Sequence record: KX397371.1
Direction: 5' to 3' (one strand)
Length of the DNA stretch: 64,000 nt
The notes under the pieces are model-generated. The model was not told the origin of the DNA and searched no databases. It was given only the letters and a program-made list of their open reading frames with translations. The translations under genes were made by a program, and so were the position numbers. The number at the start of each line of letters is the position of its first letter. The first letter of the stretch is position 1. Shown here piece by piece: positions 4,229-60,479 of this stretch.

Positions 4229-4314
4229 GGCGGGTTACTCAAGCGGTCAACGAGAGCAGACTGTAAATCTGTTGCCTTCGGGCTTCGTAGGTTCAAATCC
4301 TTCACACGCCACCA
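4229..4314 (+). tRNA. trnY: tRNA-Tyr(GTA)
   Basis: Class II cloverleaf, CTGTAAA loop, long variable arm, CCA; G5·A68 and T·T mismatches. Confidence 0.9.
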
Positions 4315-4320
4315 AACAAT

Positions 4321-4538
4321 GGTACCTGTCACAGCAGCCCTTGAGGCTTACGCGATGATGACTGGTCGCCCATTTTACCGGGTAACACATTCCTGCCAGC
4401 GCGCTATTGCCGCGAAGGTTTGCCCCCGGTGTTGTGCGTTATTCGGGTCTACCCACCATCTGCGGATGGTGCGTTGATGTCTCGATATACGCCATAGGGA
4501 CGCCTTGAGAACTCCGTGAAATTCGGAGAGGTACCACC
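4321..4538 (+). ncRNA. tRNA-like acceptor/T module enclosing a ~180-nt structured insert
   Basis: GGTACCT (4321-4327)/AGGTACC (4529-4535) followed by ACC; adjacent 5-bp stem with 7-nt loop CTCCG-TGAAATT-CGGAG. Confidence 0.6.
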
Positions 4539-4540
4539 CA

Positions 4541-4609
4541 TTCTTGTGTTTCCTTATCCTGAAGACATTCGTAAGACAAATCCATTCATGGTCGAGGAAA
4601 CACAGAACC
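4541..4609 (+). ncRNA. small RNA element copy A (paralog of 5843-5913)
   Basis: 13-bp closing stem (1 bulge) TTCTTGTGTTTCCT/AGGAAACACAGAA then CC; interior shares TCCYGAA-GACATTC...CATGGTC with copy B. Confidence 0.6.
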
Positions 4610-4615
4610 TATTCA

Positions 4616-4691
4616 GGTGCTATCGTCTAGTGGCCGAGGATACTACCCTGTCACGGTAGAGACCGGAGTTCGATTCTCCGTAGCACCGCCA
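4616..4691 (+). tRNA. trnD: tRNA-Asp(GTC), copy 1
   Basis: Cloverleaf GGTGCTA/TAGCACC, CTGTCAC loop, GCCA end. Confidence 0.95.
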
Positions 4692-4699
4692 TTTTAAAA

Positions 4700-4775
4700 T
4701 GCGTCTTAGCTCAGTTGGTAGAGCGCTCCCCTGATAAGGGAGAGGTCACTGGTTCAAGTCCAGTAGATGCAACCA
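4700..4775 (+). tRNA. trnI: tRNA-Ile(GAT)
   Basis: Cloverleaf TGCGTCT/AGATGCA, CTGATAA loop, ACCA end. Confidence 0.95.
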
Positions 4776-4781
4776 AACACT

Positions 4782-4860
4782 GGTGTATGTAGTTCAGTTG
4801 GTTAGAATTCTGGCTTGTGACGTCAGAGGTCGGTGAGTTCGAATCTCCCCATACACCCCA
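4782..4860 (+). tRNA. trnH: tRNA-His(GTG)
   Basis: G-1:C73 pair, TTGTGAC loop, CCA end. Confidence 0.95.
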
Positions 4861-4867
4861 ATTTAAT

Positions 4868-4944
4868 AGTGCTGTAGTCGAGCGGTTTAAGACGCCTGCC
4901 TGTCACGTAGGAGATCGTGGGTTCAAATCCCATCAGCACTGCCA
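4868..4944 (+). tRNA. trnD: tRNA-Asp(GTC), copy 2
   Basis: Cloverleaf AGTGCTG/CAGCACT, CTGTCAC loop, GCCA end. Confidence 0.95.
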
Positions 4945-4950
4945 CATTAC

Positions 4951-5027
4951 ATTCCCGTCATCTAGTTGGTCCAGGATACGACACTTTCACTGTCGGTACA
5001 CGAGTTCGAATCTCGTCGGGAATACCA
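4951..5027 (+). tRNA. trnE: tRNA-Glu(TTC)
   Basis: Cloverleaf ATTCCCG/CGGGAAT, CTTTCAC loop, ACCA end. Confidence 0.95.
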
Positions 5028-5032
5028 TTTGT

Positions 5033-5123
5033 AGAGAATTGACTGAGTTGGTTTAAGGTGCTCCCCTGCTAAGGGAGTGTATGCGAAAGTGTACCATTGG
5101 TTCGAATCCAATATTCTCTGCCA
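5033..5123 (+). tRNA. trnS: tRNA-Ser(GCT)
   Basis: Class II cloverleaf AGAGAAT/ATTCTCT, CTGCTAA loop, long variable arm, GCCA end. Confidence 0.93.
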
Positions 5124-5161
5124 TGTTCTCTTGCTGTGGGAAATAGAAGCGAACGTAGAAA

Positions 5162-5240
5162 CGCCGGTTAGCTCAAAGCTTAGAGCGTCTCATCTTCGGA
5201 TGAGAAGGTTGGGGGCGCAACCCGAAATCCCTATCGGCAA
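5162..5240 (+). ncRNA. anticodon-less tRNA-like element (UUCG-capped anticodon arm)
   Basis: GCCGGT/ATCGGC acceptor, TA-GCTC...GAGC D arm, TCTCATC-TTCG-GATGAGA arm, enlarged T loop, no CCA. Confidence 0.6.
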
Positions 5241-5500
5241 CGGCCTGCTTGTCAGGATTAGAAACATCTACGTGGATGGGTACTTCTACAGCAAGAACAA
5301 AACAGTGGGAGCATTGTCCACTGTGACACCGGCAAAGGTTTCGACCTTGCGGGTTGGGCGGAAGCCCGATGTTCCCCCGAACGCTGGCCTTCTGGCCAAT
5401 ACAGTGAAAGCTTACCCTTGCCGATGATCACCTCTTCTGCTGCTGCCAACACACTGTATAACCAGAATCAGTCCTGCCTTAAATGGCAAGCGTTCACCCT
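5241..5500 (+). ncRNA. candidate structured RNA between tRNA-like modules
   Basis: Hairpins ACAGTGG/CCACTGT, AGGT-TTCG-ACCT, GGGC-GGAA-GCCC and ATACAGTG/CACTGTAT; no credible ORF. Confidence 0.45.
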
Positions 5501-5504
5501 TTAC

Positions 5505-5582
5505 GTTTCCTCAAGGCGGCTTGGGGTGTTATCTCTCGGCTCTGTTGGGTAACATCGTGGTTCAACTCCATGGGAAACACCA
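5505..5582 (+). ncRNA. tRNA-shaped RNA with canonical T loop and ACCA but no anticodon loop
   Basis: GTTTCCT/GGGAAAC then A-CCA; CAAG/CTTG mini D stem; ~9-bp arm with 12-nt loop; GTGG-TTCAACT-CCAT. Confidence 0.65.
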
Positions 5583-5588
5583 AACAAT

Positions 5589-5680
5589 GGCTCCGTAGCT
5601 AAATCGGTAGAGGCAGACTTTAATTAGTTCTCCAACGATTTTATAATCGCGTGGTGTAGGTTCAAGTCCTACCGGAGCAA
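5589..5680 (+). pseudogene. degenerate tRNA with two central hairpins and no CCA
   Basis: GCTCCG/CGGAGC acceptor and perfect T arm GTAGG-TTCAAGT-CCTAC; broken D stem; no 7-nt anticodon loop. Confidence 0.55.
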
Positions 5681-5756
5681 GAGCACTGCTGTTAAGTTGG
5701 TTAACACCCGACCCATACTCGGATATTCGCACGTTCGATTCGTGCCAGTGCTCGCC
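5681..5756 (+). tRNA. atypical tRNA with CAT anticodon (Met/Ile2-like)
   Basis: 8-bp acceptor GAGCACTG/CAGTGCTC, 5-bp D stem GTTAA/TTAAC, CCCATAC loop (C33), canonical T arm, G-CC end. Confidence 0.7.
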
Positions 5757-5764
5757 CTTATTTA

Positions 5765-5840
5765 GACTCTGTAGTTCAGTTGGTAGAACGGTGGACTGTT
5801 AATCCATATGTCGCAGGTTCGAGTCCTGCCAGAGTCGCCA
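5765..5840 (+). tRNA. trnN: tRNA-Asn(GTT)
   Basis: Cloverleaf GACTCTG/CAGAGTC, CTGTTAA loop, GCCA end. Confidence 0.95.
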
Positions 5841-5913: not shown

Positions 5914-6111
5914 AAATCCCAGCCTTCGCAGAAAAAGCTTACCTGCATTAGCGGTCCCCTGCGGGGGTTGGGTACCACCTTTGTCCGTTTTGTTTTTTTC
6001 TTTCAATTGCCTGGCGGTATTGGTGGGAACAAAACGGGTAAAGCCCTAGCGGGGGAAAAGCCGTTAACAACAACAGAAGCAGTAAAAACAGAAGTAAAAG
6101 CAGGAGTAGTT

Positions 6112-60424: not shown

Positions 60425-60479
60425 ACCCCACCTTCGGGTGGGGTGCTCTTTCTTTTTTACAAATCCCCTTTTGGTTATG
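60425..60479 (+). terminator. terminator overlapping a TTAC-N15-TATG promoter
   Basis: ACCCCACC-TTCG-GGTGGGGT plus T run; TTAC 60457-60460 and TATG 60476-60479. Confidence 0.75.

What the first reader, a model, noticed from the sequence alone, without database searches (positions are those of the whole stretch)
5162..5240. tRNA whose anticodon loop is replaced by a cUUCGg tetraloop
Seen: a normal 5' half (C1·A72 mismatch as in initiator tRNAs, TA-GCTC...GAGC D arm), but the anticodon arm is a 7-bp stem capped by C-TTCG-G, and the T loop is enlarged to ~12 nt. A stable tetraloop suggests selection rather than decay. It cannot decode and offers no anticodon to nucleases. Its 3' strand ATCGGCAA can alternatively pair with TTGCCGAT (5419-5426), hinting that it is the 5' domain of a larger switchable RNA.
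Basis: partly seen in the sequence, partly recalled or inferred. Interest (0 to 1): 0.68.

Follow-up and report, generated by a model that had tools for sequence, protein, structure and literature searches.

The report
tRNA-shaped non-decoding RNA in jumbo phages
Inside the tRNA gene cluster of the giant Erwinia phage Parshik lies a conserved RNA that keeps the cloverleaf outline of a tRNA but has no anticodon and has rebuilt D and T loops; it recurs in an unrelated giant phage, matches no catalogued RNA family, is mis-annotated as a protein gene, and its function is unknown.

Summary
Window 5162-5240 of Erwinia jumbo phage Parshik folds as a cloverleaf. Its "anticodon" arm is a 7-bp stem capped by UUCG, and its T loop is 14 nt. 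ARAGORN makes no call, and the Rfam tRNA model gives 13.6 bits against a cut-off of 29.

It is a selected RNA, not a decaying tRNA or a protein gene. Across five Machinavirus lineages and one unrelated 262-kb phage, 96% of pair cells are paired. Nine of 21 pairs show compensatory double changes (0 of 500 shuffles reach this). The annotated gp18 frame is broken by an indel in three lineages.

The conserved parts are the D arm, with the palindromic loop AAAGCUUA, and the T-loop core AACCCGAA(A/U)U. The UUCG loop is not conserved: the capped arm is a different hairpin in SNUABM_43 (CUAGC loop) and a 43-nt hairpin in the distant phage.

In Machinavirus the cloverleaf is clamped by leader-trailer helices into a 177-nt domain (5124-5300). 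That domain heads a 464-nt structured non-coding stretch.

Function is unknown. My best reading is a tRNA-derived scaffold that presents two conserved loops to a partner. It is a new variant of the known kind of tRNA-like stable RNAs in phage tRNA operons.

The parts
5124..5141 (+). P1 5' strand of the leader-trailer clamp. It starts directly after the encoded CCA of tRNA-Ser (which ends at 5123).
   Evidence: Pairs with 5284-5300. The perfect 9-bp core is 5129-5137 with 5288-5296. Also seen in the consensus and single-sequence folds. The leader 5124-5161 is invariant in 5 lineages.
5153..5159 (+). P2 5' strand (ACGTAGA)
   Evidence: Perfect 7-bp complement of 5267-5273. Cofolding the two flanks gives z -3.7, with 0 of 500 shuffles as good.
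5162..5168 (+). Acceptor-stem 5' strand
   Evidence: Pairs with 5233-5239. Three of its pairs change on both sides in the distant homologue, and G-U becomes A-U in SNUABM_43.
5171..5186 (+). D arm: 4-bp stem GCTC/GAGC with the 8-nt loop AAAGCTTA (palindrome AAGCTT, no G18-G19)
   Evidence: The loop is invariant in all lineages. The 18-mer TAGCTCAAAGCTTAGAGC is identical in the unrelated phage G002. SNUABM_43 differs only by one stem change, C>T, which turns C-G into U-G.
5188..5205 (+). Anticodon-arm analogue: 7-bp stem capped by C(UUCG)G, with no anticodon
   Evidence: It is replaced by a different 7-bp stem with a CUAGC loop in SNUABM_43/42 (two compensatory pairs). It is a 43-nt hairpin in G002.
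5206..5210 (+). Variable-loop analogue (AGGTT)
5211..5232 (+). T-arm analogue: 4-bp stem (G-U to A-U in SNUABM_43; ACAGG/CCTGT in G002) and a 14-nt loop with the conserved core AACCCGAA(A/T)T. There is no T-psi-C motif.
5233..5243 (+). Acceptor 3' strand, discriminator A5240 and tail CGG (no encoded CCA). The tail A-YGGC is shared with G002.
5244..5256 (+). Small hairpin CCTG-CTTGT-CAGG in the trailer
5267..5273 (+). P2 3' strand (TCTACGT)
5284..5300 (+). P1 3' strand
   Evidence: The A>G change at 5293 turns U-A into U-G.
5301..5503 (+). Domain II of the same non-coding stretch. It holds several hairpins, including a GGAA-capped one, a second AAAGCTTA at 5407-5414, and a 37-nt core (5464-5500) kept in more distant Machinavirus.
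   Evidence: Consensus fold with two compensatory pairs in SNUABM_6. The core is seen and the motif.
5504..5583 (+). Domain III: a second anticodon-less cloverleaf with a canonical T loop (TTCAACT) and a CCA-type end
   Evidence: Stem TGTTA/TAACA becomes CATTA/TAATG in SNUABM_10/6.

Best explanation
5162-5240 is a functional, non-decoding, tRNA-derived RNA module. It is neither a tRNA, nor a pseudogene, nor part of a protein gene.

Shown:
- It lies on the tRNA strand inside the phage tRNA operon, directly downstream of tRNA-Ser.
- All four helices of the cloverleaf are maintained by compensatory substitutions.
- The same cloverleaf occurs next to the only tRNA gene of an unrelated, complete 262-kb jumbo phage. 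There the D arm and the T-loop core are identical, while the acceptor and T stems are different but still paired.
- In Machinavirus the cloverleaf is clamped by two leader-trailer helices into a 177-nt domain (5124-5300). That domain heads a 464-nt structured, non-coding stretch.

Inferred mechanism:
- The RNA is transcribed with the tRNAs and keeps the tRNA core geometry as a rigid scaffold.
- The former anticodon arm has become a sequence-indifferent strut. In Parshik it is closed by a stable UUCG cap.
- The rebuilt D loop (palindrome AAGCUU) and the enlarged T loop (AACCCGAA) are the working surface, which binds a partner. The partner could be another RNA, another copy of itself through the palindrome, or a protein.

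Whether the cloverleaf is cut out by RNase P and a 3' nuclease, or stays inside the larger RNA, is not known.
For: - **Identity and context:**
- **Not a recognisable tRNA:**. The distant homologue matches no Rfam family at E up to 10, not even tRNA.
- **Covariation:** the SNUABM_43 arm keeps 7 bp after 17 variable positions in a 25-nt stretch. The acceptor and T stems go from G-U to A-U. On the alignment of five Machinavirus lineages plus G002, 96% of cells are paired and 9 of 21 pairs have changes on both sides. No shuffle out of 500 reaches this, and slid controls give 42-58% paired.
- **Strand:** the G-U pairs fit only the + strand.
- **Not coding:** a 1-nt indel shifts the gp18 frame in 3 of 5 lineages, variable sites fall 16/11/11 by codon position, and there is no significant Pfam hit (best E = 0.22, below cut-off).
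- **Distant homologue:** L047 = L075 = G002 scores 37 bits, E about 1e-8. It has the identical D arm and the 10-nt T-loop core in a 13-nt loop.
- **G002 is unrelated:** it is complete, does not match two large Parshik proteins, and has a single tRNA (Lys), about 120 nt downstream of the cloverleaf on the same strand.
- **Clamp:** (z -3.7, 0 of 500; z -3.15).
- **Weak RNA-level evidence:** a wastewater metatranscriptome holds a lone 211-nt contig covering 5150-5360.
Against: - No direct evidence of transcript ends, stability or processing. The metatranscriptome contig could be DNA carry-over, and no control stretch could be laid.
- Only two lineages are known. The Machinavirus sequences are about 95% alike, so the effective number of sequences is 1.4. 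The alignment used for pair counting was fitted to the model.
- The distant homologue was found with a pattern that required the D arm. D-arm identity is therefore by construction. Independent support comes only from the T-loop core, the paired stems and the tail.
- The leader-trailer clamp is not significant in G002 (z about -1), so 'module of a larger RNA' may hold for Machinavirus only.
- No partner has been identified. Loop-mediated binding is inference from conservation alone.
Confidence: 0.5

Rival explanations
1. Free-standing tRNA-body decoy. The cloverleaf is excised by RNase P and a 3' nuclease, and may receive CCA from the host enzyme. It then titrates a tRNA-binding factor, for example a tRNA-targeting immune nuclease, while offering no cleavable anticodon loop.
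For: - The cloverleaf, not its flanks, is what the two phage lineages share.
- The capped arm is free to vary.
- In G002 it sits beside the phage's only tRNA, tRNA-Lys(UUU). That species is targeted by PARIS and anticodon nucleases, and phages counter this with their own tRNAs (PMC11464382, PMC10264068).
- Immune nucleases that act on the tRNA body or tail are known (PMC12851939, PMC12445682, PMC13056530).
Against: - The universal elbow nucleotides (G18-G19, T-psi-C) that most tRNA-binding proteins read are replaced by a different, conserved pair of loops.
- No CCA is encoded, although the neighbouring tRNAs encode it.
- In Machinavirus both ends of the acceptor stem run into the clamp helices.
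- No processing data exist.
- Parshik's near-identical relative encodes no CCA-adding enzyme.
Confidence: 0.22
2. Self-associating or long-range kissing RNA. The palindromic D loop (A-AAGCUU-A) pairs with another copy of itself, or with the second AAAGCUUA at 5407-5414. This would build a dimer or a compact multi-domain particle, as in the ornate phage RNAs found near tRNA islands.
For: - The D loop is invariant in every lineage, and the 18-mer D arm is identical in G002, while the acceptor and T stems differ there.
- All three AAAGCTTA 8-mers of the 64-kb window lie within 760 nt: 5175, 5407 and 5934. They are kept in the relatives that have the cloverleaf and absent from the fetched loci of those that lack it.
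- ROOL and GOLLD are phage RNAs near tRNA islands that multimerise through kissing loops, some of them self-interacting (bioRxiv 10.1101/2024.12.08.627333).
Against: - A palindrome cannot covary, so no sequence test is possible.
- AAGCUU is a weak 6-bp contact.
- G002 has no second copy nearby.
- Co-occurrence in close relatives may be shared ancestry only.
- The D-stem sequence is also typical of ordinary tRNAs.
Confidence: 0.15
3. Processing punctuation only. The cloverleaf is kept merely as an RNase P / 3'-nuclease cutting signal that releases or stabilises the neighbouring RNAs, like mascRNA at the 3' end of MALAT1.
For: - Position inside a polycistronic tRNA array.
- A truncated anticodon arm, as in mascRNA.
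- Leader-trailer pairing is known to aid MALAT1 3'-end maturation (PMC8457004).
Against: - A cutting signal would not need identical, non-tRNA D and T loops in two unrelated phages.
- Ordinary tRNAs already punctuate the array.
Confidence: 0.08
4. Decaying tRNA pseudogene left over from turnover of the tRNA array, with no function.
For: - Phage tRNA arrays gain and lose genes. The spacer content differs between Machinavirus subclades.
- The element resembles real tRNAs weakly. The best match within the array is tRNA-Ile(GAT).
Against: - Compensatory changes occur in all variable stems.
- The arm of SNUABM_43 was rewritten yet is still perfectly paired.
- A homologue with the same odd loops exists in an unrelated phage that has no tRNA array.
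- No relative has an ordinary anticodon at this place.
Confidence: 0.03
5. The stretch encodes the annotated hypothetical protein gp18 (5131-5427), and the RNA fold is incidental.
For: - GenBank annotation in Parshik, Huxley and Machina.
- The frame stays open after the shift in some relatives.
Against: - A frame-shifting indel in 3 of 5 lineages changes the whole C-terminal third.
- No third-position bias (16/11/11).
- No significant Pfam hit (best E = 0.22, below cut-off), and a TTG start only.
- Four relatives' annotators called no gene here.
Confidence: 0.02

Closest known systems
Phage T4 species 1 RNA (rnaC) and species 2 RNA (rnaD), the stable RNAs of the T4 tRNA cluster
   Same: - Encoded on the tRNA strand inside a phage tRNA cluster.
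- Non-decoding.
- rnaC also has tRNA-like parts: a terminal stem and a T arm.
- Function still unknown (PMC3014915).
   Different: - No sequence or model similarity. Model R1 hits T4 tRNAs but not rnaC or rnaD.
- rnaC keeps a canonical T loop (UUCGAAU), whereas this element has a 14-nt loop with a different conserved core.
- This element keeps the full four-arm outline.
mascRNA, the tRNA-like small RNA at the 3' end of MALAT1
   Same: - A cloverleaf with a shortened, anticodon-less arm embedded in a longer transcript.
- Leader-trailer pairing around the tRNA-like element (PMC8457004).
   Different: - mascRNA is eukaryotic, and its role as an RNase P/Z processing signal with CCA addition is demonstrated.
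- Here processing is untested.
- Here the D and T loops are rebuilt and conserved.
YrlA / bacterial Y RNAs (the tRNA-like module bound with Ro60/Rsr)
   Same: - Non-coding RNA with a tRNA-mimicking domain closed by a long stem formed from the 5' and 3' ends.
- Some jumbo phages carry the TROVE protein with a tRNA-like partner (PMC7824862).
   Different: - No TROVE/Ro60 gene in the near-identical phage genome.
- No Rfam Y-RNA match.
- From my own knowledge of YrlA, not checked here: the closing stem continues from the anticodon-stem side and the T and D loops stay tRNA-like.
ROOL and GOLLD ornate RNAs of phages and prophages
   Same: - Large structured non-coding RNAs of unknown function, often next to tRNA islands.
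- Conserved loops mediate RNA-RNA contacts (bioRxiv 10.1101/2024.12.08.627333; PMC5737381).
   Different: - No match to either Rfam model.
- Much smaller: 177 nt for the domain and 464 nt for the whole stretch.
- Multimerisation is not shown here.
Canonical tRNA. Among the array's own genes the nearest is tRNA-Ile(GAT), 4700-4775.
   Same: - Acceptor, 2-nt linker UA, 4-bp D stem GCUC/GAGC, position 26, a 4-5-nt variable loop, and a T stem stacked on the acceptor.
- Models R1 and R2 score real tRNAs at 19-30 bits.
- 47 of 80 positions are identical to tRNA-Ile(GAT).
   Different: - No anticodon loop, no G18-G19, no T-psi-C loop, no encoded CCA.
- Rfam tRNA score of 13.6 against a cut-off of 29, and no ARAGORN call.

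Membership tests
tRNA (Rfam RF00005) | Scores at or above the family gathering threshold, or is called by a tRNA finder | tested here: not met
   13.6 bits against 29, partial match 5169-5233. No ARAGORN call. The G002 homologue has no tRNA match at E up to 10.
tRNA (Rfam RF00005) | 7-nt anticodon loop with U33 and an anticodon on a 5-bp stem | tested here: not met
   A 7-bp stem with a 4-nt UUCG loop. SNUABM_43 has a 5-nt CUAGC loop. G002 has a 43-nt hairpin.
tRNA (Rfam RF00005) | D loop with G18-G19 and a 7-nt T-psi-C loop (the elbow) | tested here: not met
   The D loop is AAAGCUUA. The T loop is 14 nt (13 in G002) with the core AACCCGAA.
tRNA (Rfam RF00005) | Cloverleaf helices: acceptor, D, anticodon and T stems | tested here: met
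   All four helices are present and covary.
   C5162/A5239 is present in Machinavirus, but G002 has G1-C72. There is no anticodon, and the arm stem is A/U-rich.
T4-type stable RNAs of phage tRNA clusters (rnaC/rnaD) | Encoded within the tRNA cluster on the tRNA strand, and non-decoding | tested here: met
T4-type stable RNAs of phage tRNA clusters (rnaC/rnaD) | Sequence or structure homology to rnaC or rnaD | tested here: not met
   R1 with filters off finds T4 tRNAs but not rnaC or rnaD on their strand. The folds differ.
T4-type stable RNAs of phage tRNA clusters (rnaC/rnaD) | Accumulates as a stable, processed small RNA during infection | not testable with these tools
   The only evidence is a 211-nt metatranscriptome contig covering 5150-5360, without a control.
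Y RNA / YrlA | Partner Ro60/Rsr (TROVE) gene in the genome | tested here: not met
   No PF05731 match in G001, and the controls were positive.
Y RNA / YrlA | Match to the Rfam Y-RNA-type models | tested here: not met
tmRNA | tRNA-like domain with a tag reading frame, called by ARAGORN or Rfam | tested here: not met
ROOL / GOLLD | Match to the Rfam models | tested here: not met
   No match at E up to 10 in 5100-5620, nor at gathering score in the whole window.
ROOL / GOLLD | Phage-borne and next to tRNA genes | tested here: met
mascRNA-like processing element | Cleaved by RNase P at its 5' end and by a 3' endonuclease, then given CCA | not testable with these tools
   No end-resolved RNA data are available.

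The most novel reading that the evidence does not exclude
The cloverleaf founds a new class of phage RNAs. These would be tRNA-body mimics whose anticodon arm has been neutralised and whose elbow has been rebuilt into a dedicated binding surface. Two uses are conceivable. One is as an RNA inhibitor or decoy of a tRNA-targeting bacterial immune effector. That would explain why an otherwise tRNA-poor jumbo phage keeps it beside its single tRNA-Lys. The other is as a self-pairing building block, through the palindromic D loop, of a larger RNA assembly.
Probability: 0.2. Interest if true: 0.85.

Novelty: new variant of a known kind. Interest (0 to 1): 0.6.

Why it matters
- **Open question in phage biology.** Phage tRNA clusters have held unexplained stable RNAs since T4's species 1 and 2 RNAs were described about 50 years ago. 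tRNAs are now recognised as a main battleground between bacterial immunity and phages.
- **A defined test object.** This is a tRNA-shaped RNA that demonstrably cannot decode, is kept by selection and is shared by two unrelated jumbo phages. It offers two short conserved loops to mutate, a dispensable arm to tag, and cultivable phages (Parshik, Huxley, Machina).
- **Annotation.** The gp18 "hypothetical protein" of these genomes should be replaced by non-coding RNA features.
- **Databases.** The family is absent from Rfam.

Tried and rejected
The complementarity is real. Two of its positions change without compensation in relatives.
- **Long-range pairing of the T loop (5215-5227) with 5347-5359.** The G>A change at 5351 in SNUABM_10 breaks it but fits a mismatch position of the local hairpin. 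G002 has no cis complement.
- **Alternative T arm TTGGG / 7-nt loop / CCCGA.** Broken twice in SNUABM_43 and absent in G002.
- **The minimum-energy T-region pairing.** Broken in SNUABM_43.
- **Ro60/TROVE and a CCA-adding enzyme.** Neither is present in the phage.
- **Homology to T4 rnaC/rnaD.** None.
- **Leader-trailer clamp in G002.** Not significant.
- **Search for further lineages.** I ran 8 IMG/VR pattern scans, 1 metagenome scan, 1 genome-collection scan, a blastn of both elements against 50,697 phage records, and model scans of 10 related or comparison jumbo-phage genomes plus G001 and G002. Only the Machinavirus subclade and G002 turned up.
  - L072, L073, L076 and L132 were chance matches in coding DNA.
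  - L133, L100 and the other weak hits were ordinary tRNAs.
  - One scan (85 pattern) had a D loop one base too long by my own slip and was repeated correctly.
  - All of these scans required the D stem or the T-loop core, so members with other loops would have been missed.
- **Sigma-70 promoter and terminator scans.** Nothing usable.
- **Pfam scan of gp18.** No significant hit.
- **Reads.** Contigs only, no ends. 

Full report
**Where this is.** The window is Erwinia phage vB_EamM_Parshik, a 241-kb jumbo phage of the genus Machinavirus. It matches 100% over 1,701 nt, and window and record coordinates are the same. The finding lies on the + strand in a tRNA array (4229-5840). It sits inside a 464-nt gap (5124-5587) that starts right after the encoded CCA of tRNA-Ser(GCU). 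GenBank places a hypothetical CDS, gp18 (5131-5427), on this gap.

- Acceptor: CGCCGGT (5162-5168) pairs with ATCGGCA (5233-5239). That is six standard pairs plus the C5162/A5239 mismatch, followed by discriminator A5240.
- Linker and D arm: TA, then GCTC / AAAGCTTA / GAGC.
- Capped arm: a perfect 7-bp stem closed by C(UUCG)G (5188-5205).
- T arm: a 4-bp stem around a 14-nt loop, not about 12 nt.
- The single-sequence fold returns the acceptor, the D arm and the capped arm: -30.4 kcal/mol, z -2.7.
- ARAGORN is silent. The Rfam tRNA model reaches 13.6 bits against a threshold of 29.

**It is a selected RNA, not decay and not a protein gene.** The whole 464-nt stretch is present in eight records of one Machinavirus subclade. 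Parshik, Huxley and Machina are identical here, and SNUABM_43 and SNUABM_42 are listed with identical statistics. SNUABM_10, SNUABM_6 and Salmonella phage pSal-SNUABM-04 are 94-95% identical.

In the five-lineage alignment, SNUABM_43 has 17 variable positions within the 25 nt from 5187 to 5211. Its arm is nevertheless again a perfect 7-bp helix, TCTTACC-CTAGC-GGTAAGG. Two pairs have changed on both sides, and the loop is different.

Every other change in the cloverleaf keeps pairing:
- acceptor G-U to A-U;
- D stem C-G to U-G;
- T stem G-U to A-U;
- pSal04 arm C-G to U-G.

The gp18 frame fails as a coding frame:
- It is shifted by a 1-nt indel in a hairpin loop (after 5343) in three of five lineages.
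- Variable sites fall 16/11/11 over the three codon positions.
- Pfam finds no significant hit (best E = 0.22, below cut-off).
- The annotators of four relatives called no gene there.

**A distant homologue shows which parts matter.** A metagenome scan for the D-arm 18-mer, filtered with a covariance model built from the cloverleaf (R1), gave one strong hit (L047; 37 bits, E about 1e-8). The same sequence lies in an IMG/VR genome (L075 = G002). G002 is 261,788 bp with terminal repeats and is estimated complete.

G002 is unrelated to Parshik:
- tblastx of the fetched G002 loci against the window finds nothing.
- Two large Parshik proteins find nothing in G002.
- G002 carries a UvsX-like recombinase next to the element.

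The G002 element folds on its own into the same cloverleaf. Compared with Parshik:
- The D arm (18 of 18) and the T-loop core AACCCGAATT are identical.
- The tail A-YGGC and the purine-rich leader are shared.
- The acceptor (GTTCCT/AGGGAC) and T stem (ACAGG/CCTGT) are different but paired.
- The former anticodon arm is a 43-nt irregular hairpin.

The D-arm identity was required by the search. The independent evidence is the 10-nt T-loop core at the right place inside a non-canonical 13-nt loop, together with the paired stems. I estimate the chance of this at about 2e-3 over all prefiltered loci.

On the alignment of all six sequences, 96% of pair cells are standard pairs and 9 of 21 pairs show changes on both sides. 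None of 500 shuffles reaches this, and slid controls give 42-58%. The G-U pairs fit only the + strand.

G002 has a single canonical tRNA, tRNA-Lys(UUU). It starts about 120 nt downstream of the cloverleaf on the same strand. An 18-nt motif is repeated upstream of both RNA units, which may be a phage promoter (this is inference). The element is therefore not a by-product of tRNA-array turnover.

No third lineage turned up in any other scan.

**Context in Machinavirus.** The consensus fold and the single-sequence folds enclose the cloverleaf in two leader-trailer helices:
- P1: 5124-5141 with 5284-5300, with a perfect 9-bp core.
- P2: ACGTAGA (5153-5159) with TCTACGT (5267-5273).

Cofolding the two flanks alone gives z -3.7, and none of 500 shuffles is as good. 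The leader is invariant in all five lineages, and the one change in P1 (5293 A>G) keeps a wobble pair.

The stretch therefore has three domains:
- **Domain I (5124-5300, 177 nt):** the clamped cloverleaf plus a small hairpin.
- **Domain II (5301-5503):** several hairpins, with two compensatory pairs in SNUABM_6.
- **Domain III (5504-5583):** a second anticodon-less cloverleaf with a normal T loop and a CCA-type end.

The proposed helix with 5418-5425 loses two pairs without compensation in relatives. The clamp is not significant in G002, so the cloverleaf itself is the conserved unit.

**Expression.** Only contigs were available. A wastewater metatranscriptome holds a lone 211-nt contig covering 5150-5360, and nothing else of the 751 nt laid. 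A second cDNA library holds 5284-5464 and 5446-5700. This is compatible with an abundant RNA. It does not prove transcription, shows no ends, and could not be controlled.

**How it most likely works.**

Shown: this is a tRNA-derived cloverleaf on the tRNA strand, kept by selection. Its conserved nucleotides are the D arm with its loop and the T-loop core. Its former anticodon arm is free to change in sequence and length as long as it stays a hairpin.

Inferred:
- The RNA is made with the tRNAs.
- The tRNA core serves as a rigid scaffold.
- The UUCG cap only stabilises a strut.
- The two rebuilt loops are the working surface.

The usual elbow nucleotides (G18-G19, T-psi-C) are gone, and the same replacements are kept in two unrelated phages. 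This argues for a specific partner rather than general tRNA mimicry.

The D loop, A-AAGCUU-A, is a 6-nt palindrome. All three AAAGCTTA 8-mers of the 64-kb window lie within 760 nt: the D loop, domain II at 5407, and the start of gp21 at 5934. They are kept in the relatives that carry the cloverleaf. An RNA-RNA contact, within one molecule or between copies, is therefore a live possibility, but palindromes cannot covary.

The decoy reading gains some colour from the neighbouring lone tRNA-Lys in G002. That tRNA species is attacked by PARIS and anticodon nucleases and is replaced by phage tRNAs (PMC11464382, PMC10264068). The link is circumstantial.

My odds:
- scaffold presenting loops to a partner, within the larger RNA: about 0.5;
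- excised decoy: 0.22;
- self-pairing assembly: 0.15;
- punctuation only: 0.08;
- pseudogene or protein gene: 0.05 together.

**Comparison with known systems.**
- **T4 rnaC/rnaD.** In kind, the element is closest to the stable RNAs of the T4 tRNA cluster. They have the same location, tRNA-like parts and unknown role (PMC3014915). There is no homology, and rnaC keeps a normal T loop.
- **mascRNA.** It resembles mascRNA in having a stub arm and leader-trailer pairing (PMC8457004).
- **YrlA.** It resembles YrlA in being a tRNA-like module closed by a terminal stem, but the phage has no Ro60/TROVE gene.
- **ROOL/GOLLD.** These share the neighbourhood of tRNA islands and loop-mediated contacts (bioRxiv 10.1101/2024.12.08.627333), but their Rfam models do not match.
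- **Canonical tRNA.** It fails every loop-based criterion of a tRNA while keeping the helices. Real tRNAs score 19-30 bits with its model. tRNA-Ile(GAT) is the nearest within the array.

**Verdict.** This is a real, selected, non-decoding tRNA-shaped RNA, mis-annotated as gp18. It represents a small family not in Rfam and seen so far in one Machinavirus subclade and one unrelated jumbo phage. It is a new variant of a known kind. The function is open, and the tests are straightforward. Earlier notes of this scan describe neighbouring non-canonical RNAs of the same island (4321-4538, 5505-5582). They fit this picture but were not used as evidence.

Noticed in passing
window 5504-5583: A second anticodon-less cloverleaf. 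It has an acceptor GTTTCC(T)/GGGAAAC followed by A-CCA, a mini D hairpin, a long arm with an 11-12-nt loop, and a canonical T arm (TTCAACT). Stem TGTTA/TAACA becomes CATTA/TAATG in SNUABM_10/6. More distant Machinavirus (ChrisDB, Caitlin, SNUABM_9, SNUABM_4) keep it, with very different arm loops and no CCA.
   Followed up: partly
window 5301-5503: A structured non-coding domain between the two cloverleaves. It contains a GGAA-capped hairpin, a TTCT-capped hairpin, and a U(UUCG)A hairpin whose loop takes a 1-nt indel. There are two compensatory pairs in SNUABM_6. A 37-nt core (5464-5500) is 92-97% identical even in Machinavirus that lack the rest.
   Followed up: partly
window 5131-5427: The annotated CDS gp18 (PARSHIK_18, also in Huxley and Machina) is very probably not a gene. 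It has a frame-shifting indel in relatives, no codon-position bias and no significant Pfam hit, and it lies on covarying RNA helices.
   Followed up: yes
window 5175, 5407, 5934: The 8-mer AAAGCTTA occurs three times in the 64-kb window, all within 760 nt. The sites are the D loop of the cloverleaf, a junction of domain II, and codons 15-17 of gp21. The last two share the 10-mer AAAGCTTACC. All are kept in relatives that have the cloverleaf. None occurs in the fetched loci of relatives that lack it.
   Followed up: partly
window 5682-5764: The homologue of the tRNA-Met(CAT) annotated in SNUABM_43/10 has the anticodon loop CCCATAC in Parshik (C33 and C38) instead of CTCATAA, and ends GCC instead of CCA. 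ARAGORN and Rfam do not call it. It is either inactivated or an anticodon-loop variant of the kind discussed for evasion of anticodon nucleases (PMC10264068).
   Followed up: partly
window 5588-5681: A 94-nt 'tRNA-Ile(AAT)' called by ARAGORN. It is only just above the Rfam threshold (31.4 against 29 bits). The aligned relatives SNUABM_43/10 and pSal04 have nothing like it at this place. Asesino annotates a 121-nt counterpart. It is probably another non-canonical tRNA-like RNA.
   Followed up: no
window 4315-4615: A 300-nt gap between tRNA-Tyr and tRNA-Asp that folds far better than shuffles (z -4.35, 0 of 100). It begins with the same spacer, AACAATGG, that follows the CCA-type end at 5583.
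   Followed up: no
L047 1662-1679 and 1986-2003 (phage G002): An 18-nt direct repeat, AAACTGTAAACAYTAATA, lies just upstream of the RNA unit that holds the cloverleaf, and again 16 nt upstream of the phage's only tRNA (Lys). It may be a phage promoter for RNA genes. A further tRNA-like fold (7-bp terminal stem, T-like arm) lies at L047 1681-1776.
   Followed up: partly
window 60425-60443: Another C(UUCG)G-capped perfect 7-bp G+C-rich hairpin (ACCCCAC-CTTCGG-GTGGGG), picked up by the covariance model. It may be a terminator or stabiliser.
   Followed up: no
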